Source of the DNA: Octopus sinensis | Lineage: Eukaryota | NCBI RefSeq assembly: GCF_006345805.1 | Contig: NC_043011.1 | Span: 28,842,464-28,906,463, forward strand | Direction: 5' to 3' | DNA: 64,000 nucleotides | Shown here: positions 15,697 to 53,365 of the stretch, one piece after another | How positions within the stretch are numbered: the stretch's first letter is position 1 | Layout of the letters: each line of letters begins with the position of its first letter | Program-made: the position numbers and the translations under genes | The notes under the pieces: generated by a model | Seen by the model: the letters and a program-made list of their open reading frames with translations, nothing else | The model's database searches: none | What the model was told of the DNA's origin: nothing

Positions 15697-15915
15697 ACTC
15701 TTTTACTCTCTTTTACTTGTTTCAGTCATTTGACTGCGGCCATGCTGGAGCACCGCCTTTAGTTGAGCAAATCGACCCCGGGACTTATTCTTTGTAAGCC
15801 CAGTACTTATTCTATCTGTCTCTTTTGCCGAACCGCTAAGTGACAGGGACGTAAATACACCAGCATCGGTTGTCAAGCAATGCTAGGGGGACAAACACAG
15901 ACACACAAACACACT

Positions 15916-15949
<34 letters not shown>

Positions 15950-16113
15950 ACAGGCTTCTTTCAGTTTCCGTCTACCAAATCCACTCACAAGGCATTGGTC
16001 GGCCCGGGGCTATAGCAGAAGACACTTGCCCAAGATGCCACACAGTGGGACTGAACCTGGAACCATGTGGTTGGTTAGCAAGCTACTTACCACACAGCCA
16101 CTCCTGCACCTAT
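15697..16113 (-). mobile_element. SINE family B, full length, young
   Basis: Reverse complement of the family B consensus; CpGs retained. Confidence 0.92.
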
Positions 16114-16778
16114 GCACATACAGATTTCATACATATGTGTGTGTGCGTGTGTGTATAAATGTATGTGTTTTTTCAATGTGTACAAATAACATGGAAAAAT
16201 AAATAAATAGTTACCAGGGTAGCAAAAATTCACATAAGCGCCAAGGATGTTACAGTCTACTTATAAAGGTAGATGTTACAGGGTTTAGTAAAATCCTTTT
16301 GTATAACATAGATAAATTAAGAAATGGAGTTAAACACAGATGTTATTCAAATCTTTATACTTCCTATGTTTTGAAGAAAAAATTGGTATGATTCCTGAGG
16401 GAATAAAATGATATAAAACAGTGTAATCATCTCGTTAGGGAGAAAAGAGAAACAAAACACATCAATAAGCCATTTTAACTGAATGTGATTACCACGTATA
16501 TGATGAAGGGAACGCTGGCAAGTTATTTTTTAAAAAAAGCCATTAATATATTTAACGTCAAAGGTAATTTAGAGAAACAGAAGGAGGAGAAAGAAAGAAA
16601 TTAACAGAAAATTAAGAGTGGAGAAATATAGTGTGAAAATAAAGTGAAAATAAGTGAAATGAATGAAAATAAAGCTTAAAGGCATGTAAATAAATATATG
16701 TAGCAAAAATGAAATGTAAGAAGACAGTCAAAAGTCAAATTTTATAGATTGGTAGAAACTACTTATAGGAACTAAAGG

Positions 16779-17185
16779 TATAGGTGCAGGAGTGGCTGTG
16801 TGGTAAGTAGCTTGCTAACCAACCACATGGTTCCGGGTTCAGTCCCACTGCGTGGCATCTTGGGCAAGTGTCTTCTGCTATAGCCCCGGGCCGACCAATG
16901 CCTTGTGAGTGGATTTGGTAGATGGAAACTGAAATAAGCCTGTCATATATATGTATATATATATAAGTGTGTGTGTATATGTTTGTGTGTCTGTGTTTGT
17001 CCCCCTAGCATTGCTTGACAACCGATGCTGGTGTGTTTACGTCCCCGTCACTTAGCGGTTCGGCAAAAGAGACCGATAGAATAAGTACTGGGCTTACAAA
17101 GAATAAGTCCCGGGGTCGATTTGCTCGACTAAAGGCGGTGCTCCAGCATGGCCGCAGTCAAATGACTGAAACAAGTAAAAGAGTA
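16779..17185 (+). mobile_element. SINE family B, full length, young
   Basis: ggtgcaggagtggctgtgtggtaagtagc...gcagtcaaatgactgaaacaagtaaaagagta. Confidence 0.92.
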
Positions 17186-17214
17186 AATGTTTGCAACAAT
17201 AAACACGCTCTTTA

Positions 17215-17790
17215 ATGGTGTATACAAGAGAATTCTCCTATGGGCCAGGGACTTTCCCTGTCTTTATAGCCTTAATTGCTTTATCTACCAAGGTACTGTC
17301 TATTTGGATAGCTGGTACCTCTGTTGGGTCAACATTCAGCAAACTCTCTTTCTCCCATTCATTCTCTTTATTTAGCAACCTTTCATAGTAGCATATCCAA
17401 GTCTCTCTCTTTGCAGCCTCATTAAATGCAGGTGAGCCATGCAGACACATTTCTCCCCTATGACATCGCGATTCTCTCTCACACACTGTCTTGCAAAACA
17501 AAATACTTCAAGTCTTTGGTCCTCATGATGCAGAACATTGGCAAATTTTTTCTTATTTGCTGCCCCTCTAGCTAAGTAAACTTGTCTCCTAGCTTCCCTT
17601 CAGGCAATCTGATACAATTCTCTGCTACCACCGTTCTTCCAATACTTCCAAGTATGTTTCTTTTCCCTAATGGCCCTGTCAACTACATTGTTCCACCACC
17701 ACATTACCTTGGGTCGAGAGGGGACTTTCCACCATCCCCAAATCTGCTCAGTAGCCCTCAACAGGTTGTCCCGTAGGAAACTCCAGTTGT
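17215..17790 (-). mobile_element. RTE-type LINE fragment (linker between endonuclease and RT)
   Basis: Frameshifted peptides WWWNNVVDRAIREKK..W..W...Y and W..YYERLLNKENEW...VDKAIKAIKTGKVPGP, typical of the region before the RT domain. Confidence 0.8.
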
Positions 17791-17834
17791 CTTCCAACAT
17801 CATGTGATGCTATATCCTCCTCTATTTCGTATTT

Positions 17835-19550: not shown

Positions 19551-19952
19551 TACTCTTTTACTTATTTCAGTCGTTTGACTGCAGCCATGCTGGAGCACTG
19601 CTTTTAGTCAAGCAAATCGGCCCCAGGACTTATTCTTGTAAGCCTAGTAATTATTCTATCAGTCTCTTTTGCCGAACTGCTAAGTTACGGGGATGTAAAC
19701 ACACCAGCATCGGTTGTCAAGCGATGCTGGGGGGACAAACACAGACACACAAACATACACACATATATATACACATATACATATATACGACGGGCTTCTT
19801 TCAGTTTCTGTCTACCAAATCCACTCACAAGGCTTTGGTCGGCTCAAGGCTATAGTAGAAGATACTTGCCCAAGGTGCCATGCAGTGGGACTGAACTCGG
19901 AACCATGTGGTTGGTAAGCAAGCTACTTACCACACAGCCACTCTGCACCTAT
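19551..19952 (-). mobile_element. SINE family B
   Basis: Full-length match to the family B consensus. Confidence 0.9.
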
Positions 19953-20340
19953 ATGTAAATGTTTATTTACAGTTTTTACTTTTGAGAAATTTTAAGAATA
20001 CCAGCAGAGTGTTTACTGACAGGAGAAACTTTGTCTGAAGGCTTATTTAACCATCAAAGAAAATTTTTTGCCTTCATGTTTATATAGGAAAAAATATTGA
20101 AAGTTTATGAACAGAAGGTGTACTGGAACTGTGAGACTATAGTCCTAGATAAATTTCTGAATAAAAGTTGCTTTTATTTTTTATGAGGAAAAATCTGAGG
20201 AATAAGTCTCGGTATAAGGTAAATATAGATAGTAAGGGAAGACCAGCAGGGTGTTAAAAAGGAAAAAATAGAAAAAAATGGAAAATAATAGAGGCAAATA
20301 CAATTAGAGGTGAAAGAAAAATCAATAAGTTGCAAAGTAT

Positions 20341-20758
20341 ACAAGGTACTACCAAAAAGTTCCACGATTAGTTATGTTGAATAAAAAATAACTTATCTAC
20401 CTAATCATCTTTGAAATAGTCACCTTGCACAGCAATACACCAGTCTCAGCATTCCTGTCACTTTTGGAATCCATCCTGGGAGTCGTTTTCTGTGAGTCGC
20501 GGATTTTCTGTGATTTGCTCTTGATCTTGACAACGGTGTCGAAACAGCAACCTTTGAACTGCATTTTCTTCTTGGGGAAGAGATGGAAGTTTGCTGGTGC
20601 TAATTCTGGTGAATAGGGTGGGTGTGGAAGTGATACCATGTTGGTTTTGGAGAGAAACTCACAAATGAAGAGAGCTCACTGACAGGATGCATTGTCATCA
20701 TGAAGAGTCCAATTCTTCATGCTCCACAGATCCACTCACTTTCACTGAATGTCTTCCC
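20341..20758 (-). mobile_element. mariner transposon 3' relic
   Basis: Peptide WTLHDDNA...LPHPPYSPELAPANFHLFPKKKMQFKG matches the mariner D,D34D C-terminal motifs LHHDNA and YSPDLAPxD. TIR-like end caaggtactaccaaaaagttc. Confidence 0.88.
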
Positions 20759-21112: not shown

Positions 21113-21509
21113 CTCTCTCTTTTACTCTTTCACTTGTTTCAGTCATTTGACTGCGGCCATGCTGGAGCACCGCCTTTACTCGAGCAAATCGACCCCGGGA
21201 CTTATTCTTTGTAAGCCAAGTACTTATTCTATCGGTCTCTTTTTGCTGAACCGCTATGTGACGGGACGTAAACACACCAGCATCGGTTGTCAAGCGATGG
21301 TGGGGGGACAAACACAGACACACAAACATATACACACACACATACATATATATATACATTCAGTTTCCGTCTACCAAATCTACTCACAAGGCATTAGTCG
21401 GCCCAAGGCTATAGCAGAAGACACTTGCCCAAGATGCCACGCAGTGGAACTGAACCCGGAACCATGTGGTTGGTAAGCAAGCTACTTACCACACAGCCAC
21501 TCCTGCGCT
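21113..21509 (-). mobile_element. SINE family B inserted into a locally duplicated segment
   Basis: Its flanks are contiguous in the paralogous empty site at ~25390-25410. Confidence 0.92.
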
Positions 21510-21913
21510 TAGTTGCCATTTGTGAATGCTTTCACAACTGGAGTACAAATCTGTGTTTACTTTAGTAACTAAGAATTTCTCCTTAAATACTGTTTGTACA
21601 CGATAGCACAATCATCGACCTGGCTTTGGTGCTTTACTATATAAGTACATGATTCTCCTGAATCCTGGAAATTTTATACACACACACAATGAATTCCTTT
21701 CAGTTTCCATCTACCAAATCCCACTCACAAGTATTTGGTGAGCATGGGTCTATAATAGAAAACACTTGCCAAAGGTATCATGCAGTGAGACTGAACCTAA
21801 AACAATGTGGTTAGGAAACAAATTTTTTAACCACGTGGTCCCACTTGCACCTATTTGTGTACGTAATTTAATTATAATGTGTATGTTTGTGCACTTGTTA
21901 TTTGTATGTGTTT

Positions 21914-27889: not shown

Positions 27890-28670
27890 TAAGGCAGCAA
27901 GCTAGCAGAAATGCTTAGCAGTATTTTGCCCATCACAATATTTCTCAGTTTAAATTCCACCAAGGTCAACTTTACCTTTCATCCTTTCAGGGTTTATAAA
28001 TTAAGTACCAGTTGAGCACTGAGGCCAATGTGATCAAATGTCCCCCCTCTCCACAAAATCCAGGTCTTGTGCCTATAGTAGAAAGGATTATTATTACAAG
28101 AGTGAATGTGGCAAGCTGGTATAATTGTTATTACATTGGATGTAATGCTTAGTGGCATTTCTTCTGGTTTTTATTCTTTTATTCTTCTACTTGTTTCACT
28201 CATTAGACCGCAGCCATGCTGGAGCACTACCTCAAAGAATTTTAGCCAAATTAATCAACCCCAGTACTTTATTTTTTAAACCTGGTACTTTTTCTATTGG
28301 TCTCTTTTGCCAAAACTGCTAAGTTACAGGGATGTAAACACACCAGCAAGCTTCTTTCAGTTTCTGTCTACCAAATCCAGTCATAAGACTTTGGTCGGCC
28401 CAAGGCTATAGTAGAAGACACTTACCCAAGGTGTCAGGCAGTGGAACTGAACCCAGAGCCATATTGTTGGAAAGCAAGCTTCTTACCACACAGCCACTTC
28501 TGTGCCTATACTTTTCTTTACATTTTGAGTTCAAATTACACTGAGGTCAATTTTGCCTTCTATCTTTCCAGGGTTTATAAAACAAAGTACTAGTCAAGTA
28601 CTGGGATCAGTGTAATAGACTTGCTCCCTCCCCTCAAAATTACTGACCTTCTACCAAATTTAGAAAGAAT
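27890..28670. mobile_element. Two SINE A copies, the second split by a nested SINE B (-) at ~28172-28510
   Basis: gcatttcttctggtttt | SINE B | ctttacattttgagttcaaat rejoins the family A sequence. Confidence 0.8.
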
Positions 28671-33499: not shown

Positions 33500-34179
33500 T
33501 ATATATATATATATGTGTGTGTGTATACATATATGCATGTCATGTAAAAATGCCTGTGCAGTACCTCATAAAAGCACCCAGCACACTCTAAAGTGGTTGG
33601 TGTTAGGAAGGGCATCCAGCCATAGAAATCATATCAAATCAGACTGGAGTCTGGTGCAGCCCACCAACTTACCAGCTCTGGTCACACCGTACAACCCATG
33701 CAGGCACGGACAACAGACATTAAATGATAAGGATGATGAACTTCTGTATATAAATGTACCATGCACACAAAGGGAGGGCTGTATGTTTACATAGGGCAGA
33801 CAGCTGATTCATTTAAGAATTGTTATCACAACGATGTCACCAGCTTCAACAGAATCAGTAAGATACATTCAACATCTTTGGCTGATTTTTTGTGTGGCAA
33901 CTGAAGGAGGATAAAATTAAGTACAACATAACTTGGTCCATAGTAAGGCATGCAAAACCATACAATATCATTTCCAGATGCTGACTCTGCCCTGAGAAAT
34001 CCCTGTCTATTCTGTGGACCAATGTGAAGATCATTAATAGAATTTCTGAAAGACTTTCAAGATGCCTACATGCATATAAATGTTGTTGGCATCTTTTTGT
34101 CTCGGGATACAATGGAGTTGCACACAAACTAATCTAGTCTGGTTTTTACATTTCATGTCCTCTCCAGTTTTGCACAGGC

Positions 34180-38497: not shown

Positions 38498-40050
38498 CAT
38501 TGACTAATATTTTGTCTTAGTTAAATTGGCAAATTGGCACAAGACTGCAATACCTTAGAAGATCAGCAGTGATTTGCAATCAAAAGTCTATAGATTACAT
38601 TTTTTGTGTTACATAGTTCATTGGCCTGAATAAACTACGATACAAAGAGAAGATGGGCTGGATGAGGTGTCACAGTCTGAGCCGTTATTTTTCTGTTTAG
38701 AACTAGCTTAAAAGCCGCACTCCATATGGACTTTTAAGCTGCCTACTGTGGAAAGCCAATTGGGCTTGTAGGCCAAAACTAAAGAAAGCAATTATAATAA
38801 AGCATTTGTTGGTACCCTACTAATATGATATTACTTTAAATTCATTTTGAATGAAAAACTTGTAAGTTCACAAATTTTTGAGAGTTCTTTTAAAATTTGA
38901 ATTTTCAACTGTTAGTGTACAACAAATCCTCATCCAGACCTGATCCCAATGCTGGATGTTAAGGAACCAATTGAAGGGCAGATTTTCAATCCTGGGCTCA
39001 TCCTCATTCCAAAAAGTTATAATATGTCTATGTAGAGCAAATGGAGACTAAAATAAAGGGGTCCTAGATGGACAGACAGAATTTCATGCTTGTTATTACA
39101 TGATTGCCTTCCTAGTTGGGTCAGGGACCACATCTCACTCATATGTTCCATTTTTGGCACAGTTTCTACAGTTGGGTACCCTTACCAAAATCAAACATTT
39201 TACAGGGCATACTGAGTGCATTTTATTGTGGTACAGTACCAGAAGGTTGTCAGGTCTCTGACTAAAAGGCCCTCTCTACTCTATGTTGTTTATGGTAATT
39301 TGTCAACCATTTTAAGGAGACCTAGGTGCATTTTATCATGACACCAATCACCTGTCTTCTCTACCCTACATCACTTTTGTTCATTCACCACCCACTTGAC
39401 AGAATATATTTTTATGTTTTATGTTTCAGTCATTAGACTGTGGTCATGCTGGGGCACTGATTGAAGGGTTTTAGTCGAACAAATTGACCCCAGTAAATTT
39501 TCTTTTTAAGTCTGGTACTTATTCTATTGGTCTCTTTTCTTTCTTTTGTTTACCAAACTACTAAGTTACAGGGACGTAATCAAACCAACACCAGTTGTCA
39601 AGCAAGATGGAGAGAAAACACAACCTCAGATACACACACACACACACACACCTACAATGGGTCTCTTTCAGTTCCATCAACCAAATCCATTCACGAGGCT
39701 TTGGTCAGCCTGGTGCTACATTGGAAGACATTTGTTCAAGATGGAACTGAACTCAGAACCATGTGGTTGAGAAGCAAACTTCTTACCACACAGCCAGGTC
39801 TCCACCAATAGAGTATTTTATTGTGGCACCAGCACTGAAGATGTTATCTTGTCCCCAGAAAGGCAACACAACCCTATTAACACTATGCATTATTGTTTCT
39901 CCAAGACAATCTCTCTAGTCATGTGGAACTAATCAGGACTATGTAACACCAAAAACAGTAATCTATAGATTTTTGATTTTTAATCACTGCTGATCTTCTA
40001 ATGTTTCTCAGTCTTGTGCCAATTTTGCTAAAACATACTATTAGTCAATG
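38498..40050. mobile_element. Old element bounded by ~115-bp imperfect inverted repeats, with a nested SINE B (~39410-39800)
   Basis: 38498-38616 is approximately the reverse complement of 39938-40050 (ttggcacaagactg, ttagaagatcagcagtgatt, tctatagattac, gtgttacatagt). Confidence 0.7.
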
Positions 40051-40160
40051 ATTAATATTGATATTTTTCCTCATCACATATTCCTAGTGAGATTTTTTAT
40101 GCTCCCACTATTATGTTAATCCTTACTTAATTGTTCATGAAGCAGATGTTGCAAGTGTAA

Positions 40161-40198
<38 letters not shown>

Positions 40199-40401
40199 GC
40201 ATGCATACATGCCTGTATGAATGTATGTAAACACATGTATATTATGTGTGTGTACCTATATATAGATATGTGTGTGTATATGTGTATGTATATATATATA
40301 TATAACGGGAAGGTTTATGAAAATAAACAAAAGACGAAGGCAGGTGGAGTACAAACAAACAAATGTATTAGTATGGCGCTCAGGAATAGAAATAGAACAA
40401 G

Positions 40402-40439
40402 TCTTTTACGTTTCGAGCCTACGCTCTTCGACAGAAAGA
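40402..40439 (-). ncRNA. Minimal hammerhead-like fold with core variant
   Basis: On - strand: TCTTT|CTGTCGA|A|GAGC-GTAG-GCTC|GAAA|CGT|A|AAAGA. Stems I and II perfect, ACGT palindrome, GUA site; core position 6 is U instead of A. Confidence 0.6.
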
Positions 40440-40507
40440 TACACAGAAAAGAAACAAGGAGAGAAACAAGGAGAGAAAAAAATGCGTGTAGGAGCTAACG
40501 ATCTATC

Positions 40508-40538
<31 letters not shown>

Positions 40539-40766
40539 TGTATGTATATATATATATGTATACATCTGTGTGTGTAACCACCATAATTGTAGACCCACTT
40601 TCCATGCTGATATAGGTAGACCACTTCAGTTGGACCTAACATATGTTCAGAATTTATAGCTCTTCAAAGCAGGTCATGGGACTTCATCTTGTTCATGTTT
40701 CAGATTCTTGCTTGCTTTCTACTGCTGTAACTGATTAATCATCATTTTTTTTTTCCTTTTTTCCAG

Positions 40767-40877
40767 GTGTATCCTTTAGATAAAATGAGCAGAGATAATG
40801 GTGCCATACTCGTCTGCTGCGGCCCAGACAACAATGGAGGACATGGACTTGTCTGTGCACGACACCTTAAACATTTT
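40767..40877 (+). CDS. NAXE: NAXE/YJEFN3-like gene, exon B
   Basis: Poly-T acceptor ttttttccAG, donor GTAAGT at 40878. Encodes [37 protein letters not shown], matching the Yje[18 protein letters not shown] motif region. 111 bp, phase 0/0. Confidence 0.97.
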
Positions 40878-41445
40878 GTAAGTAAACTGATTAAGAAGCT
40901 TAAAAGTAGATCGATCTTTTATTCTTTTACTTGTTTCAGTCATTTGACAGTGGCCATGCTGGAGCACTGCCTTGAAGGGTTTTAGTTGAAGAAATCGACC
41001 CCAGGGCTTGTATTTTTTTTTAATGCCTAGTACTTATTCTATCAGTCTGTTTTGCTGAACTGATAAGTTACAGGATGTGAACACACACCAGCACAAGTTG
41101 TCAAGCTGTGATGGAAGGACAAACACAAAGGCACACATACATACATAGATAGATACTGTCTTCATCTATTGTTTCAAATTACTGTTGTTTACTTTCCTAC
41201 ATCCACCCTGTATTATTTTGTTTGCTCGAGCCCTGATTCTCTGTAAATCTTGTGGGTGACACTGATATATGACGTTCCTAGTCTTATCGTTAAAGGCATG
41301 AAACTAGGTTTTAGTATTTTTCAATTGATAACTGATGAAGTATTAGGGTTCTGGTGTCTGTCCTTCATGTACAGTTTGTAGTACTTAATTCATTTTTCAT
41401 TTATGGAATAACTAAATGCCACACATCCTGATTTTTGTTATATGC

Positions 41446-41494
<49 letters not shown>

Positions 41495-41496
<2 letters not shown>

Positions 41497-41905
41497 TTTT
41501 ACTCTCTTTTACTTGTTTCAGTCATTTGACTGTGGCCATGCTGGAGCACCACCTTTTTAGTCGAGCAAATCGACCCCAGGACTTATTCTTTGTAAGCCTA
41601 GTACTTATTCTATCGGTCTCTTTTGCCGAACCGCTAAGCTATGGGGACATAAACACACCAGCATCGGTTGTCAAGCAATGTTGGGGGGACAAACACAGAC
41701 ACACAAACATACACATACATATATATTTATACATATATACGACAGGCTTCTTTCAGTTTCCGTCTACCAAATCCACTCACAAGGCTTTGGTCGGCCTGAG
41801 GCTATAGTAGAAGACACTTGCCCAAGGTGCCACGCAGTGGGACTGAACCCGGAGCCATGTGGTTGGTAAACAAGCTACTAACCACACAGCCACTCCTACG
41901 CCTAT
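41495..41905 (-). mobile_element. SINE family B, full length (partial copies at 40917-41135 and 41920-42050)
   Basis: Match to the family B consensus. Confidence 0.9.
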
Positions 41906-43317
41906 GTGTATATATATGACAAGCTTCTTTCAGTTTCCATCTACCAAATCCACTCACAAGGCTTTGGTCAGCTCAGAGTTATAGTGAAAGACACTTGCCC
42001 GAAGTGGCATGCAGTGAGACTGAACATGTAACCACATGGGTGGGAAGCAAACCATCCTTGCACTTTTTAAAATGAACAGCTATTTCAAAATTTTACTTAA
42101 AGCATCTTTTCCAAAGTACATATACCCTTATACAATAAAGCAACACCTTTCAGCCATATATATGTTCTAATTTCAGTTTTTTTTCACCCAGACACTAATT
42201 AAATCTACAATATAGTTTGCATCTACCACAAAGTACATTTTCACCAACAGTAAGAACCACTTTAATAACTATTAATATGTGTTCGACCAATCTGCTCCCC
42301 CCGAAAATACTTTAAAACATCTCATAAATTCAGAACATAAACACCATTAACATTACACCATTTAATATATTTATTTACTTAACCTTCAACCAATAAATTT
42401 TGCTTTAACTATCATTATATATAACATAATATAATTTTATTTTTCTTTAATTCATTTCACTATAATTATGGTCTCTGCCCTTTCTAACATGATCTCAAAC
42501 TATTTCTAATACATTAACAATTTAACACTGTAAATTCACATTCCCAATAACTATATACAACATTATACGAATTTAATATTCTAAAACAATTACAATTTAA
42601 ATGTATTTTTTGTTTGAAGAGTTTGTGCCAGTTAATGCCATGTGTTATTTGTAATATATTTTCTGTACAATGAATTCAATTAGACAATACTGTTGCAGCA
42701 ATGAATAACATCCTACTGTTTTCTATAATAGAATAAATTATTTATTTGATATATCAATCATAATTGTCTATAATTGGAACATTATTTAATTTCATATATC
42801 ATCATCCTCATTGTCATCATCATCATCATCATCATCATCATTTAACTTCTGCTTTCCAAGCTGGTATGGGTTAGATGGTTTGCCTGGAACTGGTAAGCTG
42901 GAGAGCTGCACCAGGTTCCTGTCTGGTTTGGCATGGTTTCTACAACTGGATGCCCTTTTTAGTGCTTTTTATGTAAAAATAAGGGTACAGATAAAAGAAG
43001 AGAGGATGAAGATAAAAAAATGAAAAAGGATCAAAGAACTTAGGAAAAGAAATAAAGAGAATAATAAGATGCCAGCACTATTTCTCAAATTTAGGGTTGG
43101 AGCAAGAGATCAAGCAGTGAATTAGTGTCTATTGAATAGATGAAGTTCCAGTTGGTTATGGCCAGTAATTTTATGAATATATTCCTACCTATGGGAGTGT
43201 GAATACATTAAAGGAGGAATGGAGAAGTAGGCATGAATGAAGAAACCAGTTAAATATTTGTTTAAGAATAAAAGTTACAATTTAAGATTTGGAGATCTAA
43301 GAGGTTAAGGTTTAAAG

Positions 43318-43596
43318 CCGTGGTTCCCAAAGTGGGTGATATCCCCGCACCCCGGGGGGTGCAGTGGAAAGTTCCTAGGGGGTGTTGAAGAAAAGTGGGG
43401 CGATAATGGGGTAGTAATTCATGAAAAACAACAAAATAATGGGTTCATTGGATTAAGTTTTACTTGTGAAATACAGTTGCTTTGAATTTGCTTCAGAAAG
43501 AGGTATAGGCTCGTGATGGTTAGTTGGGGTGGGGGAAATAGGAATGTGGCCCAGGTGTCAAGGGGGCGGCAGACTGGAAATGTTTGAGAACCACTG
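43318..43596. mobile_element. hAT (Charlie-like) MITE
   Basis: TIRs ccgtggttcccaaa / tttgagaaccactg; exact 8-bp TSD GTTTAAAG at 43310-17 and 43597-604. Confidence 0.93.
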
Positions 43597-44676
43597 GTTT
43601 AAAGTTTAAGAGATTAAATTAAAACCTGCAGGTTAAAGTAAAGAATTCACAGCTATCTTCTAAGATACTAATGGTGATGGAGAAGATAATGAAGGGATAG
43701 ACATAAGTATATTATAACGACCATGGAAATATGCAAGTAAGTGTTATGTGTGAGGGATAGTTTACACTTGGACTTATGGAAAAATTTAAATGTCCATAAA
43801 AATATGTTTACAAGTTGTGAATGCTTTGTTTTGTTTGTTGAGTAACTGTGGTGAGTTGAGTTAATATCTGGAAGGTCTCCTTTAGGCAGAGCCCAGATTT
43901 AGAGCACTGACCCTGATATGGGATGCCAGAATCTATGATCGTCCAGGATGTCCTATATTGTATTTTCCTATTAATTAGATGGTGTATGTGGCTGGCTTGG
44001 GATGTGGAGGAGCAATGGCTCAGTGGTTAGGGCAGTGGACTCGCGGTCGTAGGATCGCGGTTTCAATTCCCAGACAGGTAATCTAAATGACTAGGTATGC
44101 TAAGTAAGTGCTGTAACGGATTACTAGGGCTCCAAGGTTGCAGATTTCCAAGCAGCAGATATATAATTCTTAAAGAGGACAACAAATGTTGAGGCAAGGC
44201 AAACACCTCAAGTCATATACATTATTATTATTAGAAAAGAAATTCAAAGTCTCACAGCTATTTCTGGGATATCCCAGTGTATGGGATATTTTGTCATTGG
44301 AGACAAATAGGGAAAATGAGAAGGGTTTAGATTAATGAACTTATGATGTAGGAGACAGGAGTAAAGGAATAAAGAGATGAAGAAAGAGAAGAAAAAAGAA
44401 GCATTAAAGTTCAGTTCTACTTTCCAATCTTGTAGAAATAAGTCCATAAGTCCTTAGCTGCAATCCTGCCTAAATCCATGTTGGTTACATGTATATATAT
44501 ACGATAGGTTTCTTTCAGTTTTTGTATACCCAGTCCACTCTGAAGGCTTTGGTTGACCTGAGGCTATAACAGAAGATGCAATGCAAGAAGACTGAACCTA
44601 GAACCATGTGGTTGGGAAACAAGCGTCTTACAACACAGCTGTGCCTATATATATGTGTGTGTGTGTATATATATAA

Positions 44677-45640
44677 ATGAATGAAAGAATGGAGTTGAAC
44701 GAAGATTTTAACAAAATTCCTTTACTCTCAACACATGTTTCGAAATTTGGCATCTTAAGGACAACAATATAACTTTCAAGCTGGATTGGTCCATATTGTC
44801 TGTATCCTTTCCTTTTGATAAGGGCAGGAAATATTGTGGCATTTGTAATTCTGAACTCTTCTATATCCTTTTCGCCAAGTTCCCCTTGGTAAACACACTA
44901 ATAGAAAAATCCTATAAATGTAAGCATTGGCAGAAGCACACTTTCCACTCATATAAATGATAAATAATATAGATAACCTCTTTGATTTTAATAATTAGTT
45001 TCACGTCTACACCACTGCCATAGACAAATTCTTTCTGTCTACTCCGTTGCATGAAACATTACTACTAAATATCGTTGGCGTATGTTTATCTCTTTCTCTC
45101 TACCTCTCCCCCTCTCTTTCTCTCTCTCTCTCTCAATCATACGCACAATCAAACACACAGACACAAATTTGTCACCTCACTACTAAATATATTTGACAAT
45201 TGTCCCCCACACACACACAATTACACACACACACACACAAATGCAGTTATATACACACACTCATACACACACATAAACACTCAAACTTATTAACAAAAGC
45301 AAACACCCGCGCATCCCCATACATACAGCATACATAATGTCCCCTTCCTATTTTTAGAACTTCCACCTTCCAACCAATTTTGACGTCATTGCTTATAACA
45401 GATTATTTTTAAAAAAACACTCATTATCACTGTGGACACCATGTAGGCAGTCATCAAAAAGTCTTTGTTCGTCTTGAGGCTGATAGAGGTTCCTTGTCTT
45501 TCCTGATGAGAAGACAGCATAATGCACCCTTTATTCCTTCGGAATTAAGAGTATGCAGTCTTCGAAACATATGTTGAGAGTAAAGGAATTTTGTTAAAAT
45601 CTTCGTTCAACTCCATTCTTTCATTTATTCATATTTAAAA
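44677..45640 (+). mobile_element. 5'-truncated Penelope-like element: endonuclease C-terminus, 3' pLTR with hammerhead, inverted pLTR tip at the 5' junction
   Basis: Open frame 44742-44960 EIWHLKDNNITFKLDWSIL...PFDKGRKYCGICNSELFYI...LVNTLIEKSYKCKHWQK* matches the PLE GIY-YIG C-terminal CxxC...CxH pattern. 44677-44745 is the reverse complement of ~45561-45635. Confidence 0.88.
45490..45588 (+). ncRNA. Type I hammerhead ribozyme fold
   Basis: Stem I TTCCTTgtCTTTC/GAGAGtaAAGGAA; core CTGATGA 45503-09; stem II GAAGAC.GCATA/TATGC.GTCTTC; GAAA 45564-67; palindromic stem III ACATATGT; site GUU at 45573-75. Confidence 0.85.
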
Positions 45641-45776
45641 AAAACACACAAATTTCCACACAAGAACACGGGGTTTCTGCCCTTGACATGTAGCTTCAAC
45701 CGTGTTTTCTGACGTGAATTTGCTACCCAGGTACCGATTAACCGAATTATCCATACTAGGATAATTCATTCACCTA

Positions 45777-45842
<66 letters not shown>

Positions 45843-46269
45843 GTATATATATATATATATAATGTATGTATAAACACATATATATATATATACATATGTA
45901 TGTATATGTGTACTTGTGTTAGAAGGCTGTCCTAGTTGTTAGGATGATGAATCGTGTTCTTGAGCAAAACACTTTATTTCACATCACTCCAATCCATTCA
46001 GCAGTAAGTGGGGTAAAAGTTGGCAAAGGGCTGGTATGCTGTTCAGGTAAAGAATATTACCTTGCCCACCTAACCAATGGATTAGCATCATTCAAAAGCT
46101 ACCACTATGCAATGAAACATATTTTGCCTAGCTGCATATAACAACATCGAATACACTCTCTCTCTCTCTCACTATATATTTATATATAAAGTCATAGTAC
46201 TGCCTACTTGCTGAGTTACTGTGCATTCTCAGTTATTAAATATATTGCTTCAATGAACTAATTTTCTAC

Positions 46270-46362
46270 TACCAAGATTCATATACATACTTACATACAT
46301 TTATACATACATGCATATATATGTCATTGTATGTCTGCATACATAATACGTACATGCATACG

Positions 46363-46443
<81 letters not shown>

Positions 46444-46593
46444 CATACATATATATATATATACATATGCATATATATATGTGTGTGTGTATGTATGTAT
46501 TATATATTATGTATATATGTATGTATATATATATATGTGTGTGTATGTACATTTGTATCATATATATATATATGTATATACACATATATATAG

Positions 46594-46690
<97 letters not shown>

Positions 46691-46720
46691 TGTATGTATG
46701 CATATATATGTCACCAAGTC
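46270..46720. repeat. Long (TA)n/(TATG)n microsatellite
   Basis: Directly visible; source of several spurious YIYI ORFs. Confidence 0.95.
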
Positions 46721-46977
46721 TAATTCTTTAAAATCTCTGATTCCAGAGTTTCCTACTTTTATCTGAGTTCCATTTCCTAAACCAAGAATATCTGTTGCAC
46801 AACTAGTCTTTAATATATTCTTTCCCCAATGCCACCACAAAATACAAAGGTTATTTCCTCTACCAAGAATAGATTGGTTCAGTTCCATGTTCTTCAATTT
46901 CTAGATATAGGCTAGTCAAAAACAGTCTATATGCTAAAAAAAATATTTTTGAATTATTTTTTCTTAATTTTTGTTTT

Positions 46978-47042
<65 letters not shown>

Positions 47043-47135
47043 TATTGTTGTCTTCATTATCCGTTGTTGTCGTCGTTGCTATTGTGCTTTTTATTCTTAT
47101 TTTTGTTGTTCTTTTTCTTGTTGCTGTTGTTTTTG

Positions 47136-47189
<54 letters not shown>

Positions 47190-47342
47190 GTGGTGGTAGT
47201 AGTTGTATTTTTTTATTTACTTCTGTCTTTATTATTTTAATATTGATTTAATTACTTTGCATTTTCATTTGCAAAAAAAAAAGAAGAATGCAGAATAAAA
47301 CTAGTCTGTTAATGCCTGCCTCTCCCCCTTCTCTGTCCCTCC

Positions 47343-47344
<2 letters not shown>

Positions 47345-47430
<86 letters not shown>
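47345..47430. repeat. (CT)n microsatellite
   Basis: Directly visible. Confidence 0.95.
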
Positions 47431-47436
<6 letters not shown>

Positions 47437-47590
47437 CACTTCATCTTCTGTTCTCTTCTGAACTATTGCTCAGGAATACTTAACTTACAACAGGTATGCA
47501 TGGAGTGCAGACAGTAAAAAGCTAGTGCATACATACAAGTATGTGCATGTATGTATATATGTATGTGTGTATATATGTATATATTATATA

Positions 47591-47643
<53 letters not shown>

Positions 47644-48009
47644 GTATGTATGTATGTATGTATGTATGTATGTATGTATGTTGTATGTATGTATGTACAC
47701 GTCACATGTACATTGACACACATATCTATATGTCTATGTATGCGTAGGCTAAGATGTACAAATGGGAGAACTAGAATTCAATACAAAAGTAGACATGAAC
47801 CACATCAGTAACTCAAAGGCAAAGAGTTTCGGGCTAAAGCACTTGCCAAACTTTTATGAGTGTTTCAGTACGAAACACTAAGCTCTGAAATCACTTTCAG
47901 GTCTTTATAACAATAAAGGCAATATACACGCAGGAAAACACTCTCTCTCTCTTTCTCTCTTTCTCACTCTCTCTCTCTCTTTCTCTCTCACTCTCTCTCA
48001 CACACACAT

Positions 48010-48040
48010 CTATGGATGGATGGATGGATGGATGGATAGT

Positions 48041-48071
<31 letters not shown>

Positions 48072-48080
48072 GTAGATAGA

Positions 48081-48116
<36 letters not shown>

Positions 48117-48181
48117 TAGGCAGGCAGGCAGGCAGGCAGGCAGACAGACAGACAGACAGACAGACAGCTAGCTAGCTAGCG

Positions 48182-48247
<66 letters not shown>

Positions 48248-48250
48248 GTA
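48010..48250. repeat. Compound tetranucleotide array (TGGA/TAGA/CAGA/CAGG/CTAG)
   Basis: Directly visible. Confidence 0.95.
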
Positions 48251-48254
48251 GGTC

Positions 48255-48790
48255 ATCATCATCCTTAAACATTCAGGTTTGACGAGAACAAACAAGCTGG
48301 AGAGCAACACCAGGTTCCAGTCTGATTTGGCTTTGATTTTTATGGCTGGATGTCCCTCATGATACCAACCACTTTACAGTGTGTACTGGGTGCTTTTAAC
48401 ATGGCACCAGCACAAGACTCTTGCAGGCCAATCCTCTTCACCAGGGTATGTGGCCTTAACACTTTTGCTGTGGTGGACAGATCCTCTTGAGTACTGCAAA
48501 GCATCAGATATCTCAGTCCTTTGTCATCTCCTCTGAAAGATTCAGCGTTCTGAGGTCATTCATCAGTACTTTGTCTCATGGGTATCTCTTTTCCACAAGT
48601 CCCATCCACTTTGAATGATCGTACTTCTTAATGGATCTCTCGACATCTAACCACATCACATGACCAAACCAGCACAATCTTCTCTCTTGGACGCTGTATC
48701 TAATTCCTCTTGTGCCTAACTTTTTTCTCAACACACTAGCATTCTGTCACATGTGTGCACTTCCATCGCACATACTGGCCATGTACCAAC
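48255..48790 (-). mobile_element. RTE LINE 3' end
   Basis: Peptide VQERRLCWFGHVMWLD (the RLRWFGHVxR motif), followed by a 3' UTR and a (GAT)n tail. Confidence 0.85.
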
Positions 48791-49148
48791 ACACATGCCT
48801 TTCTCTGAACTATCCATCCTTTCCTCCTTTATTCACTGATGGTCTAGAACCTCTTAAAATAAACACTAATTTATGAGCAGGGACTTCAGATTCTCACAGT
48901 TGCCAGACTAGTTAACTGGTACCTTGCACAGAATAGTATTTGTTGACTTGTATCCTTATTTTAATGTACAGGACATGTATTTCATTTATTTAAGTAAATT
49001 TAATATTTGCTTAATTTAGAATGTTTTGACCCATGGTATTGACTGGTTTAGAAAAATTAGAAATCTAAAAAGGTTTTTGAAAACCAATGTTGTATACAAA
49101 CAGAAATATGATATGTTTACAATTTTTATTTTTTACTATTTTTTGCAG

Positions 49149-49410
49149 GGGTACAAACCATCCATTTTCTACCCTAAAACTTCAAATCAACAAATCTTTG
49201 AAAACCTGAGACTGCAATGTGAGAGAATGGATATGCCATTCCTCTCATTCTTTCCCAGTGAACCACATCTGATAGACTCAGCTTATAATCTTGTGGTTGA
49301 TGCTATCTATGGTAGCTGTCACAAAGAGCGAATCACTGGAGACTTTGCTTCTGTACTAGAGACACTGAAAAAGATTGAAAATCCTCTCGTAAGTTTGGAC
49401 ATTCCTTCAG
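49149..49410 (+). CDS. NAXE: NAXE/YJEFN3-like gene, exon C
   Basis: Acceptor ttttgcAG, donor GTAGGT at 49411. Encodes GYKPSIFYPK...QCERMDMPFLSFFP...YNLVVDAIYG...PLVSLDIPS(G). 262 bp, phase 0/1. Confidence 0.97.
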
Positions 49411-50213
49411 GTAGGTACCCTTCTACTACATTGTTAACAAACACCCAAATATACCTAATTGTAGTTGGTTAGGTTGGTATTACTTAATGCTTAGCTCCAG
49501 TTTGGCTGATTCAGCCCTCAAGCAGAACCGATCAAAGATATTCCAGAGGGACTATCACATGATATTTTCAGACATAAAGTATCTATGACTACATAATTTA
49601 ATGTTTACTGTTCTCATTTTTTTTTTTCACTGGGAGGGGTTTGATTCAAGGTGATATTTGGGTGGTATTTCAAATGCATGAACACACATGGGTCAGTGGT
49701 TAGGATATTCAGCTCATGACGATAAAGTTGTGAGTTTGATTTCTGGTGACACATTGTTTCCTTGAGCAAGACACTTTATTTCACATCACTCCATTCCATT
49801 CATCTGGCAAAAATGAGTAGCACATGTATTTCAAAGGGCCAACTTTGTCACACTCTGTGTCATGCTGAATCTCCCTGAGAATTACTTTAAGGGTACGTAG
49901 AGCTGTGGACTGCTCAGCCACATGCACGTTAATTTCATGAGCAAGTTGTTCTGTTAATTGAATCAACAGGATTTATTTCTAATGCACCATGATTATTTAC
50001 TCTCTCTTCTATTCACCTGCTTGGTCATATTGCTTTCAAGAAACGATGATAGCAGAAAGTAGTGAAGACATTTTAGTAGATCTAGTAAAGCATGAGGCAA
50101 ATTCAGTGGTGCTAGTACCATGATAAAATGTACCCAGTACCTTTTATAAAGTAGTCGCCAGTAAGTGATGCAATGTGGGGTCAAGAGCTCTTCAATCCTA
50201 TATATATATACAT

Positions 50214-52337: not shown

Positions 52338-52404
52338 TTATAATATATATTCTTCATTTAGGGATAGCAGTAAACATAATAGCACAGGGCTAAGTTAATT
52401 TGTT

Positions 52405-52912
52405 TTGGTATCTAAAGACAAAAATAACAATATAAGGTTTTAAGTTAGATGGTTCATCCTGTCCATCTCTTTCCCTTATGACAAGGGCAAAGGATTTTGT
52501 AACATTTGCAACTCTGAACTCTTCCATATTCACTTCTCTAAGAATCACCTTGTTAACACACTTCTAGAGTAATCTTACAAATGTAAGCACTGGCAGAAGC
52601 ATACCTTTAGCTCATATAAGTGATTTATACCAGTCTGTATAGTTTGAACATTTAATTCACCTTGCACTTTACTTCAATAGAGAAATCTACTTCTAAGCCT
52701 TTGAACATTTTTTTCAACCAACATATCCCTCTTTATTTGTTCTCTACTTATTATTTCTTTATTCCTTCTCTTCCTATGGTCTGCCTTTGACGTCAGATCT
52801 ACTAACGTTTTTTTTTTTAAATACATAATAGCATTCGGTTTATCATTTATGCAGTCATCAAAATTATAATGTCTTGTTGTTGCGATAGGTTCTCAACAAC
52901 AAGACATTATAA
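52405..52912 (+). mobile_element. Second Penelope-like relic (same family as 44.7 kb), ending in a snap-back hairpin
   Basis: FPYDKGKGFCNICNSELFHI...LVNTLLE*SYKCKHWQKHTFSSYK*; perfect 19-bp inverted repeat at 52864-82 / 52894-912. Confidence 0.85.
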
Positions 52913-53365
52913 CATTATTTTACACTGTTTATTCCTTTGGAATGTTTCTAACATCCCTTTTTTATCATACTTAGGGCACCTACAATAACAGGAACAACTC
53001 TTATTTTAAGATGCTACATTTTTTGTATTTCAATTTCCAGGTCTTATATTGCCTTAGTTTTTTAAATTCTTTGATAGATATATTTTTATCTGTGGGAATT
53101 ATTATGAATTTGGTGAGTTGGCAGCATCACTAGAATACTGAATAAAATTCTTTGAAACATCTTTACATTCTGAGTTTTAAATCTACCAAAGTTGATTTTG
53201 CCTTTCATCATTTTAGTACAAGTTATGCACTGGGGTCAATATAATTGACTAGCCCCTCCCACCAAAACTTCAGTCCTTGTGCCTATAGTAGAAAGAATTA
53301 TTATTATTATGGTTGTTGATGTTGCTGTTGTTATCCTGATTATGATTATTTTTTTTATTATTCAG

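What the first reader, a model, noticed from the sequence alone, without database searches (positions are those of the whole stretch)
45490..45588. Well-formed hammerhead ribozyme on the sense strand of the YjeF_N gene intron
Seen in sequence: every element of a type I hammerhead. Stem I pairs 11 of 13 positions around a 2x2 internal loop, followed by CUGAUGA, an extended stem II (11 bp plus a further apical hairpin ATTCC-TTC-GGAAT), GAAA and a self-palindromic stem III (ACAUAUGU). Established: Penelope-like pLTRs carry hammerheads whose palindromic stem III favours dimeric cleavage. Inference: GUU-G probably decayed from GUC-G by CpG deamination, and GUU is a weaker but permitted NUH site. 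It lies in sense orientation in intron 40878-49148, so the pre-mRNA could carry a conditional self-cleaving site.
Basis: partly seen in the sequence, partly recalled or inferred. Interest (0 to 1): 0.85.

Follow-up and report, generated by a model that had tools for sequence, protein, structure and literature searches.

The report
Relic Penelope-element hammerhead in octopus intron
A complete hammerhead (self-cleaving RNA) motif really is at this spot, but it is the leftover 3' tail of an old, broken Penelope-like jumping gene sitting in an intron of an octopus NAXE-like gene, and nothing suggests the host gene uses it.

Summary
Window 45490-45588 (+) holds every element of a type I hammerhead ribozyme (HHR): helix I, CUGAUGA, a 54-nt helix II, GAAA, the palindromic mini-helix III ACAUAUGU, and the site GUU|G.

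It is not chance. A relaxed descriptor hits once in the window and 0.007 times per shuffled window. A covariance model built only from relatives elsewhere finds it as top hit (52.8 bits, E about 7e-10). Rfam's models miss it.

It belongs to a 5'-truncated Penelope-like element (PLE).
- An inverted 5'-truncated copy (44651-44744) abuts its 5' end.
- TA-rich microsatellites flank the unit.

Relatives show the same layout, core variation mostly at N7, compensatory changes in helices I and II, and mostly GUC. So GUU is probably CpG decay.

Host use as a conditional cleavage site is unsupported:
- it is the only complete core in the window;
- helix III forms in about 8% of the monomer ensemble;
- position 17 is U;
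- the inverted arm can sequester the 3' half (-122 kcal/mol);
- it is not detected in the available O. sinensis sequence.

It is a new member of a known kind, of low to moderate interest.

The parts
45490..45588 (+). Type I hammerhead ribozyme motif. Helix I 45490-45502 / 45576-45588; CUGAUGA 45503-45509; helix II 45510-45563; GAAA 45564-45567; helix III 45567-45574; predicted scissile bond 45575|45576 (GUU|G).
   Evidence: Sequence; fold; shuffles. A covariance model built only from relatives outside the window hits 45489-45596 at 52.8 bits, E about 7e-10.
44748..44960 (+). Remnant of the last ~70 codons and stop codon (TGA 44958-44960) of a Penelope-like element ORF. It is the C-terminal end of the GIY-YIG endonuclease: ...IWHLKD...CGICNSELFYILF...VNTLIEKSYKCKHWQKH*.
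   Evidence: A profile of this peptide and the copy at 52444-52569 gives 162 proteins with E<=1e-3, best 2e-12, nearly all matching at their own C-termini. The longer hits show CxC..CPL..C linker, GIY..YIG, R, H, then C.LC..EK..I...LNKRSE...CRH.
44961..45777 (+). 3' untranslated part of the 5'-truncated PLE copy ('arm A'). It contains the hammerhead and about 60-190 nt of tail after it. 45075-45340 is CT/CA-rich low-complexity sequence that copy B lacks.
   Evidence: Collinear matches to copies B and C and to Logan contigs. Homology to copy C runs to 45737.
44651..44744 (-). Inverted, 5'-truncated sister copy ('arm D') abutting the 5' end of arm A head-to-head. It carries only the 3' half of the hammerhead (UUCGAAACAUGUGUU|GAGAGUAAAGGAA) plus tail.
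   Evidence: 94 nt, 90.4% identical to 45561-45653 in reverse complement; nhmmer E=3.8e-16.
44647..44675 (.). TA/TG microsatellite at the left edge of the composite insertion.
   Evidence: Sequence. PLEs are reported to show a bias for inserting into microsatellites (PMC8557442).
45779..45870 (.). (TA)n microsatellite at the right edge of the composite insertion.
   Evidence: Sequence.
40768..40877 (+). Upstream exon of the host YjeF_N/NAXE-like gene (...[21 protein letters not shown]), followed by donor gtaagt at 40878.
49149..49411 (+). Downstream exon of the host gene (GYKPSIFYPK...VSLDIPSG), preceded by acceptor AG at 49147-49148.
   Evidence: It is 95% identical in DNA to O. sinensis L001 9611-10276.
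16209..16562 (-). Older decayed copy C of the same PLE 3' region. Its hammerhead homologue is at 16344-16452, with CUAACGA, AAAA and a 4-nt deletion at the site.
   Evidence: nhmmer; covariance model R1 at 51.8 bits.
52398..52941 (+). Copy B of a related PLE in the next intron, in sense orientation. It has the EN C-terminal remnant (52420-52620) and a 3' region that stops at the apex of helix II.
   Evidence: Homology to O. sinensis resumes exactly at 52942.

Best explanation
The motif is the hammerhead ribozyme that a family of canonical (C-terminal endonuclease) Penelope-like retrotransposons carries in the non-coding region downstream of its ORF. In a tandem unit that region would be the pseudo-LTR.

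Shown:
- A 5'-truncated copy of about 1 kb (44745-~45777, +) and a head-to-head inverted, more deeply truncated copy (44651-44744, -) lie in TA-rich microsatellite inside intron 40878-49148 of an octopus NAXE-like gene.
- The hammerhead in arm A has kept all core nucleotides and helices I and II.

Inferred:
- In active elements the ribozyme acts as a dimer. Its 2-bp helix III with a palindromic loop becomes a long intermolecular helix when two copies meet, as in tandem PLE transcripts. It then processes element RNA, possibly with help from the element's protein.
- At this locus it is a solitary fossil. It has no partner copy. C17 has changed to U17. In the pre-mRNA the inverted arm can pair with its 3' half. 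It therefore most likely cleaves little or not at all and has no role for the host gene.
For: Motif real and non-random.

Family membership tested independently: covariance model R1, built only from five contigs outside the window, returns 45489-45596 (+) as best hit. The hit is full length, 52.8 bits, E about 7e-10.

PLE context:
- The EN C-terminal peptide at 44748-44957 matches 162 proteins (best E 2e-12) at their C-termini. The longer ones carry the PLE-type CX2-5CxxC linker and GIY-YIG/R/H/E/N motifs.
- An inverted 5'-truncated copy is directly adjacent.
- Microsatellites flank the unit.
- 5' truncation, an adjacent inverted copy, a microsatellite target and an HHR in the pLTR are the published PLE signature (PMC8557442).

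Same architecture elsewhere: the EN end followed about 270-320 nt later by the HHR on the same strand is seen in L002, L011, L014, L015 and L018.

Selection on the ribozyme in the family:
- Box 1 varies at N7 (U, C, A). The only other change is G5A in two decayed copies.
- GUC is present in 4 relatives.
- With 5 sequences, 73% of cells are paired against 34-43% with slid partners, and 14 pairs change on both sides against 4-5.
- With 7 sequences the figures are 64.5% against 33-45%, and 15 against 6-9.

Likely weak or no activity here:
- Only one complete core exists in the window.
- Helix III probability is 0.08, while a dimer is favoured by about 9 kcal/mol.
- The MFE of the 1-kb sense RNA pairs 45561-45653 with 44661-44744, with a duplex energy of -121.6 kcal/mol.
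- Single PLE HHRs were inactive in vitro and dimers weakly active (PMC4209133).
- The Anolis PLE HHR needed the element's protein and was dispensable for insertion (PMC11167929).

Not detected in O. sinensis: no homology to 40000-48834 in the 9.6 kb upstream of the orthologous exon, and no family copy there.
Against: - No RT domain or tandem pLTR is present at this locus, so PLE assignment rests on 70 codons of EN plus the insertion architecture.
- Pfam gave no hit to ten of the homologous proteins. Their PLE-EN nature is read from motifs, not from a curated model.
- The relatives used for covariation are few and mostly decayed. They come from Logan assemblies of SRA runs SRR11869384-94, whose organism I could not determine. 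The tested structure was derived from the window copy, which inflates the paired fraction.
- Rfam's hammerhead models do not score this motif or L011.
- No cleavage data exist. A U17 hammerhead with intact helices I and II could still cleave slowly. Co-transcriptional folding could favour the local ribozyme before the long-range duplex forms.
- The O. sinensis comparison covers only 9.6 kb of a non-alignable intron, so absence of the insertion is not proven.
Confidence: 0.8

Rival explanations
1. Exapted intronic ribozyme. The sense-strand hammerhead cleaves the NAXE-like pre-mRNA conditionally and so tunes the expression or processing of the host gene.
For: - Sense orientation inside the intron.
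- All core nucleotides are intact, and helices I and II are predicted with p>=0.98.
- The inverted arm could in principle act as an on/off competitor.
- Precedent from my own knowledge: conserved intronic hammerheads HH9/HH10 in amniotes.
Against: - No partner for the dimer that the palindromic helix III needs.
- Helix III forms in about 8% of the ensemble.
- U17 instead of the family's C17.
- The 3' half is thermodynamically captured by the inverted arm.
- No detectable conservation in O. sinensis.
- The two arms have drifted 10% apart.
- Vertebrate retrozyme-type HHR elements are reported to be excluded from introns (abstract of bioRxiv 10.64898/2026.07.22.740005). That argues such insertions are tolerated rather than used.
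Confidence: 0.05
2. In the active element, the conserved 3'-UTR structure serves mainly as a recognition or initiation structure for the element's reverse transcriptase. This applies especially to the long helix II with its sequence-conserved apical hairpin UAUUCC-N3-4-GGAAU. Self-cleavage would be secondary or dispensable.
For: - The apical hairpin sequence is retained in copies A, B, C, L002 and L018, and in mutated form in L005 and L014, even where the catalytic boxes are mutated.
- The lower helix II covaries.
- In the Anolis PLE, catalytic HHR mutants did not affect insertion, and reverse transcription starts in a stem-loop near the 3' end (PMC11167929).
- Naiad PLEs thrive without HHRs (PMC8557442).
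Against: - Box 1 variation falls at the one free position N7, apart from G5A in two decayed copies. GAAA is kept in four of seven copies and GUC in four of eight. This is the pattern expected if catalysis itself is selected.
- No experiment bears on RT binding in this family.
- The sample is small.
Confidence: 0.1
3. The motif is a unit of a non-autonomous retrozyme or hammerhead satellite (tandem 170-400 nt repeats giving circular RNAs), not a PLE remnant.
For: Type I hammerheads with a short palindromic helix III are typical of animal retrozymes (PMC7229834 abstract). Retrozymes are proposed to be PLE derivatives.
Against: - No tandem repeat of the unit exists. Self-BLAST of 44600-45760 finds only the inverted arm and divergent dispersed copies, and there is a single core in 64 kb.
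- An EN ORF remnant lies upstream on the same strand, here and in every relative.
Confidence: 0.03
4. Chance resemblance in AT-rich intron sequence.
For: Rfam reports no hammerhead here.
Against: - 0.007 expected hits per window even for a loose descriptor.
- An independent family model scores 52.8 bits.
- Relatives share the layout and covary.
Confidence: 0.01

Closest known systems
Hammerhead ribozymes of Penelope-like elements (Cervera & De la Pena 2014, PMC4209133)
   Same: - Type I topology.
- A tiny palindromic helix III implying action as a dimer, a longer-than-usual helix II and G10.1-C11.1.
- Location in the element's non-coding repeat.
- Most genomic copies are solitary motifs in truncated elements.
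- Pairs on opposite strands 100-700 bp apart were described there too.
   Different: - Helix II here is far longer (54 nt; 11-12 stacked positions plus an internal loop and a sequence-conserved apical hairpin) than the 6-8 bp reported.
- There is no unpaired nucleotide between A9 and 10.1.
- Helix I is long (13 positions).
- The host is a cephalopod. A full-text search for 'hammerhead ribozyme' with 'octopus' found no description of one.
Poseidon PLE of Anolis carolinensis (PAc) and its hammerhead (Frangieh et al. 2024, PMC11167929)
   Same: A PLE with a C-terminal GIY-YIG EN, an HHR in the pLTR region and an optional 'tail' at insertion ends. It gives the mechanistic precedent that the HHR is protein-assisted and not required for insertion in vitro.
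   Different: - In PAc the HHR overlaps the ORF start.
- Here only the distance from the preceding ORF stop is known (about 270-530 nt), because the copy is 5'-truncated.
- EN homologues of this family carry the CX2-5CxxC linker (Neptune/Nematis-like), which Penelope/Poseidon lack (PMC8557442).
Animal non-LTR retrozymes and hammerhead satellites (newt satellite 2, Schistosoma Sm-alpha; PMC7229834)
   Same: Type I hammerhead with a weak palindromic helix III that is active as a dimer in multimeric transcripts.
   Different: Those are short tandem units without an ORF. This is a dispersed single copy attached to an EN ORF remnant.
Conserved intronic hammerheads of amniotes (HH9/HH10; Rfam RF02275, RF02277; from my own knowledge)
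   Same: A retroelement-like type I hammerhead lying in sense orientation in an intron of a protein-coding gene.
   Different: Those are ultraconserved across species and fold as stable monomers. This one is not detected in the O. sinensis sequence available, has a 2-bp helix III and U17, and is not detected by any Rfam model.

Membership tests
Hammerhead ribozyme, type I | Conserved core C3 U4 G5 A6 N7 G8 A9 ... G12 A13 A14, with the A15.1-U16.1 pair | tested here: met
   CUGAUGA 45503-45509; GAAA 45564-45567; A45567-U45574.
Hammerhead ribozyme, type I | Three helices around the core, with the open ends in helix I | tested here: met
   Helix I has 11 of 13 positions paired. Helix II has 11 bp plus an apical hairpin. 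Helix III has only 2 bp plus a 4-nt loop and is palindromic. Helices I and II have p>=0.98 and helix III p about 0.08 in the monomer.
Hammerhead ribozyme, type I | Cleavage triplet NUH (position 17 not G) | tested here: met
   The triplet is GUU|G. It is permitted but suboptimal by established hammerhead biochemistry (my own knowledge). Relatives have GUC.
Hammerhead ribozyme, type I | Helices supported by compensatory changes among relatives | tested here: met
   14-15 pairs change on both sides against 4-9 with slid partners, and 0-5 of 500 shuffles reach the observed values. The sample is small (5-7 sequences, several decayed) and the structure was taken from the window copy.
Hammerhead ribozyme, type I | Recognised by a curated Rfam hammerhead covariance model | tested here: not met
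   No hammerhead hit at gathering score or at E<=10. The relative L011, which has an intact core, is also missed. The probable cause is the 50-nt helix II and the 2-bp helix III, but that was not tested. This is a detection criterion, not a defining property.
Hammerhead ribozyme, type I | Site-specific self-cleavage | not testable with these tools
   Needs in vitro transcription or RNA-end mapping.
Penelope-like element, canonical C-terminal EN+ | ORF ending in a PLE-type GIY-YIG endonuclease | tested here: met
   Only the last 70 codons survive (44748-44960). A profile search gives 162 hits, best E 2e-12, matching protein C-termini. Longer hits show the linker Zn-finger-like motif and GIY-YIG/R/H/E/N. 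No curated model confirmed it: Pfam gave 0 hits.
Penelope-like element, canonical C-terminal EN+ | Telomerase-like reverse transcriptase domain | tested here: not met
   It is absent from this copy, which is 5'-truncated at about 44745. No PLE RT was recognised among the window ORFs (by eye). The family's RT was not recovered, so this feature is untested for the family.
Penelope-like element, canonical C-terminal EN+ | Insertion architecture: 5' truncation, inverted 5'-truncated copy adjacent at the 5' end, microsatellite target | tested here: met
   Arm D (44651-44744, -) abuts arm A (from about 44745, +). TA-rich repeats lie on both sides. The features are as listed in PMC8557442.
Penelope-like element, canonical C-terminal EN+ | Pseudo-LTRs (partial tandem) carrying the hammerhead | tested here: not met
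   There is no direct repeat of the unit at this locus. The hammerhead lies in the region that would form the pLTR in a tandem. This is expected for a truncated single insertion.
Animal non-LTR retrozyme / hammerhead satellite | Tandem array of short (170-400 nt) units, each with a hammerhead | tested here: not met
   A single complete core in 64 kb and no tandem copies.
Exapted conserved intronic hammerhead (HH9/HH10-like) | Conservation at the orthologous intron position across species | tested here: inconclusive
   Not found in the 9.6 kb upstream of the orthologous exon in O. sinensis L001. That part of the intron is not alignable and no empty site could be defined.

The most novel reading that the evidence does not exclude
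The hammerhead and the inverted arm about 815 nt upstream form a two-state element in the NAXE-like pre-mRNA. In one state the local ribozyme fold gives slow cleavage of the intron. In the other, a 94-bp intronic dsRNA captures the ribozyme's 3' half. The balance would be set by transcription speed or by A-to-I editing of the duplex, which is prominent in cephalopods. The relic would then have acquired a host-level regulatory effect.

A milder version: this cephalopod PLE family defines a hammerhead subclass. Its 50-nt helix II would carry a protein-binding hairpin that couples cleavage to reverse-transcriptase binding.
Probability: 0.04. Interest if true: 0.65.

Novelty: new member of a known kind. 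Interest (0 to 1): 0.25.

Why it matters
It matters only modestly.
- It extends the known link between Penelope-like elements and hammerheads to a cephalopod genome.
- It shows a family variant with a very long helix II that all current Rfam hammerhead models miss. Censuses based on Rfam will therefore undercount such ribozymes. The small alignment and model made here (A4, A5, R1) could seed a search of octopus genomes.
- For the host gene it most likely means nothing. It is one more transposon fossil in a repeat-filled intron.
- If, against the odds, it cleaved in vivo, it would be a rare case of a young intronic ribozyme paired with its own antisense competitor.

Tried and rejected
- Rfam at gathering score and at E<=10 found no hammerhead. 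I treated this as a limit of the models, not as evidence against the motif.
- A word-indexed protein search with the 69-aa ORF remnant found nothing. The exhaustive profile search was needed.
- A metagenome scan for the exact 3' half of the ribozyme found 0 matches.
- A word-indexed search with an alignment of family proteins returned only 3 short Logan contigs.
- Pfam on ten homologues gave no family.
- Several Logan contigs (L004, L006-L010) end before the hammerhead region and gave no copy.
- The O. sinensis locus L001 has no alignable sequence for window 40000-48834 and no family copy. The only model hit there (9331-9445, 20 bits) is microsatellite with no core.
- Model hits at window 58496 and 62538 are also low-complexity.
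- Chance origin was rejected. The retrozyme/tandem reading was rejected.
- I considered that CUGAUGA in arm A arose by chance from the CUAACGA seen in copies C and L002. I rejected this once L011, L014, L015 and L018 showed CUGANGA.
Full report
THE OBSERVATION

Window 45490-45588 (+) reads UUCCUUGUCUUUC / CUGAUGA / GAAGACAGCAUAAUGCACCCUUUAUUCCUUCGGAAUUAAGAGUAUGCAGUCUUC / GAAA / CAUAUG / UU | GAGAGUAAAGGAA.
- Helix I pairs 11 of 13 positions (one U-G) around a 2x2 loop.
- The core CUGAUGA...GAAA is complete.
- G10.1-C11.1 and A15.1-U16.1 are in place.
- Helix II has 6 bp, an A.A mismatch, 5 bp, an internal loop and the hairpin AUUCC-UUC-GGAAU.
- Helix III is the palindrome ACAUAUGU, which as a monomer is 2 bp plus a 4-nt loop.
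- The site is GUU|G (45575|45576).

The 108-nt RNA folds with z = -3.5 against shuffles. Helices I and II have pair probabilities of at least 0.98. The hammerhead-consistent fold (-28.3 kcal/mol) is within 1.8 kcal/mol of the MFE.

A deliberately loose hammerhead descriptor finds exactly this one site on both strands of the window. It finds 2 sites in 300 dinucleotide-preserving shuffles, which is 0.007 per window.

Rfam 15 gives no hammerhead hit, either at gathering score or at E<=10 on a 500-nt slice. It also misses a relative with an intact core. I therefore read this as a blind spot of the models for a 50-nt helix II and a 2-bp helix III. That cause was not tested.

HOST GENE AND ORGANISM

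Exons at 40768-40877 and 49149-49411 (+) encode a YjeF_N/NAXE-like protein.

The best protein match is Octopus sinensis (98% over exon 2). The DNA is only 95% identical in the exon region and about 84% in alignable intron. The window therefore comes from a related octopod, not from O. sinensis itself.

WHAT THE MOTIF BELONGS TO

Self-comparison shows that 45561-45653 is repeated in reverse complement at 44651-44744 (94 nt, 90.4%). That stretch is the 3' half of the ribozyme plus the sequence after it.

Immediately to the right of this inverted arm, and on the same strand as the hammerhead, 44748-44960 is an ORF remnant ending in a stop: WHLKDNNITFKLDWSILSVSFPFDKGRKYCGICNSELFYILFAKFPLVNTLIEKSYKCKHWQKHTFHSYK*. 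A 70%-identical copy lies at 52420-52620.

A word-indexed protein search found nothing. An exhaustive profile search against 1.8 billion representatives gave 162 proteins at E<=1e-3, best 2e-12, and almost all match at their own C-terminus.

The longer hits have a clear layout: CxC...CPL..C, GIY...YIG, R, H, then ELSK.IW.LKD...W.I....PY......C.LC..EK..I......LNKRSE....CRH..K. This is the GIY-YIG endonuclease with the CX2-5CxxC linker that Craig et al. describe for canonical PLEs of the Neptune/Nematis type (PMC8557442). Pfam did not name them, so this identification rests on motifs.

The stop directly after the EN tail, in both window copies and in the homologues, shows that the EN is C-terminal. 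This rules out the Naiad/Chlamys type.

The locus matches the published PLE insertion signature point for point (PMC8557442):
- strong 5' truncation;
- an inverted 5'-truncated copy directly adjacent at the 5' end;
- flanking microsatellite (TA/TG at 44647-44675, (TA)n from 45779);
- a hammerhead in the non-coding part.

Cervera & De la Pena also noted pairs of PLE hammerheads on opposite strands 100-700 bp apart (PMC4209133).

RELATIVES AND THE COVARIATION TEST

Iterated nhmmer with 45370-45745 recovered further copies.
- In the window: copy C (16209-16562, -) and copy B (52398-52941, +, in the next intron).
- In contigs fetched through the homologous proteins: L002/3, L011-13, L014, L015-17, L018/19 and L005.

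These contigs are Logan assemblies of SRA runs SRR11869384-94, whose organism I could not establish. In each of them the EN C-terminal remnant lies upstream on the same strand, and the hammerhead homologue follows about 270-320 nt later. In the window copy the distance is about 530 nt, of which about 260 nt is low-complexity sequence that copy B lacks.

The core table is what a selected ribozyme looks like.
- Box 1 is CUGAUGA (A, L015, L018), CUGACGA (L011), CUGAAGA (L014) or CUAACGA (the decayed C and L002). Variation therefore sits at the one free position, N7.
- GAAA is kept in A, L011, L015 and L018.
- The site is GUC in L011, L014, L015 and L018. It is GUA in L005 and GUU in A and its sister arm D.

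On a 5-sequence alignment, 73% of cells pair against 34-43% with slid partners. Fourteen pairs change on both sides against 4-5, and 0-1 of 500 shuffles reach the observed values. With 7 sequences the figures are 64.5% against 33-45%, 15 against 6-9, and 1-5 of 500.

The support is strongest for the lower helix II and the first five pairs of helix I. The caveats are a small sample, decayed copies, and a structure taken from the window copy.

As an independent check I built a covariance model from the five external contigs only (A5, R1). Its best hit in the window plus L001 is 45489-45596 (+), full length, 52.8 bits, E about 7e-10. Copy C follows at 51.8 bits. The remaining hits are microsatellite.

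GUU VERSUS GUC

The family consensus is C17, followed by G in three of the four GUC copies. U7 in box 1 likewise looks like decay of the CpG in CUGACGA, which is harmless at N7.

Both arms A and D carry T at position 17. So either the source RNA already had U17, or the CpG decayed twice. The data do not decide between these.

HOW IT MOST LIKELY WORKS, AND WHAT IT DOES HERE

Inferred from the anatomy and the literature:
- In active elements, two copies of the ribozyme pair through the palindrome to make a long helix III. The computed dimer is -69.6 kcal/mol against 2 x -30.1 for monomers.
- The dimer then cuts element transcripts.
- Published PLE hammerheads show no detectable cleavage as single motifs and low cleavage as dimers (PMC4209133).
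- The Anolis element's hammerhead needed the element's protein and was dispensable for insertion in vitro (PMC11167929).

At this locus four things argue against activity:
- there is no second complete hammerhead in 64 kb;
- helix III has probability 0.08 in the monomer, and the MFE instead pairs AUG of the core with CAU of helix III;
- U17 is suboptimal and extends the palindrome to AACAUAUGUU, which can pair A14 with U17;
- in the sense pre-mRNA the already-transcribed inverted arm can pair with the whole 3' half of the ribozyme. That covers the GAAA box, helix III, the site and the 3' strand of helix I. The duplex energy is -121.6 kcal/mol, and this pairing is what the MFE of the 1-kb region contains.

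The two arms differ by 10%. The O. sinensis sequence available (9.6 kb upstream of the orthologous exon) has no homology to window 40000-48834 and no family copy. That region could not be aligned well enough to show an empty site.

I therefore rate host use of the ribozyme as unsupported and unlikely (about 5%).

COMPARISON WITH KNOWN SYSTEMS AND NOVELTY

The motif works like, and passes the tests I could run for, a PLE hammerhead. It is not a retrozyme or satellite unit, because there is no tandem array. It shows none of the conservation that defines exapted intronic hammerheads.

It differs from published PLE hammerheads in these respects:
- a very long helix II whose apical hairpin UAUUCC-N3-4-GGAAU is conserved in sequence across divergent copies;
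- no bulged base after A9;
- a long helix I;
- invisibility to Rfam.

A full-text search found no description of a hammerhead in octopus.

The verdict is a new member of a known kind, real but ordinary. Its modest technical interest is for ribozyme censuses.

Noticed in passing
window 44651-44744 with 45561-45653: In the sense pre-mRNA these inverted arms can form a 94-bp, 90% complementary intronic dsRNA (-121.6 kcal/mol). That makes it a plausible substrate for A-to-I editing, which is prominent in cephalopods.
   Followed up: partly
window 33880-34092 (+): A second PLE endonuclease C-terminal remnant from a different, more canonical family (...WQLKEDKIKYNITWSIVRHAKPYNIISRC*LCPEKSLSILWTNVKIINRISERLSRCLHAYK). 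tblastn gives E=1.7e-6 to the peptide at 44748. I saw no hammerhead core in the 600 nt downstream.
   Followed up: partly
window 40768-40877 and 49149-49411: The host NAXE-like gene has substitutions in motifs that are invariant in bivalve homologues. CGPGNNGGDG becomes [10 protein letters not shown], and FGFSFKG becomes YGSCHKE. The second change is shared with the O. sinensis 'NAD(P)H-hydrate epimerase-like' protein. The gene may be a divergent paralogue or a decaying gene.
   Followed up: no
window 52398-52941 (+) and L001 11354: PLE copy B lies in the next intron, also in sense. It stops at the apex of helix II, exactly where homology to O. sinensis resumes (52942 = L001 11354, 94% identity). 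B is therefore absent from, or replaced at, the orthologous O. sinensis site, and it is truncated at its 3' side. That is unusual for a PLE.
   Followed up: partly
L011-L013 1229-1363; L018/L019 2179-2362: Relatives with fully intact hammerhead cores (CUGACGA or CUGAUGA, GAAA, GUC) sit in contigs assembled independently from several SRA runs. The contigs read straight through the cleavage site. In L018 the 5' strand of the lower helix II is deleted, so the conserved hairpin follows G10.1 directly.
   Followed up: partly
window 15700-17190, 19730-19965, 21296-21524, 28293-28521, 41556-42094 and others: A highly repeated element of about 230-480 nt occurs in both orientations, including 239-nt arms that are 96% complementary at 15708-15946 / 16945-17183. 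A tRNA-like SINE family (GTTCAAATCC...GGTCGATAAA) has at least 11 copies. These are ordinary interspersed repeats of this genome.
   Followed up: no
window 20400-20675 (-), 17240-17810 (-), 48576-48734 (-): Other transposon ORF remnants seen by eye in the ORF lists. One is a mariner-like transposase C-terminus (...PHPPYSPELAPANFHLFPKKK...). The others are LINE-type reverse-transcriptase fragments (...GKVPGP...RRLCWFGHV...).
   Followed up: no
window 45559-45693 (+): The best Rfam match near the finding is a weak, sub-threshold hit to a Tetrahymena H/ACA snoRNA model (26 bits against a gathering score of 130, E=0.043 on 500 nt). I regard it as chance.
   Followed up: no
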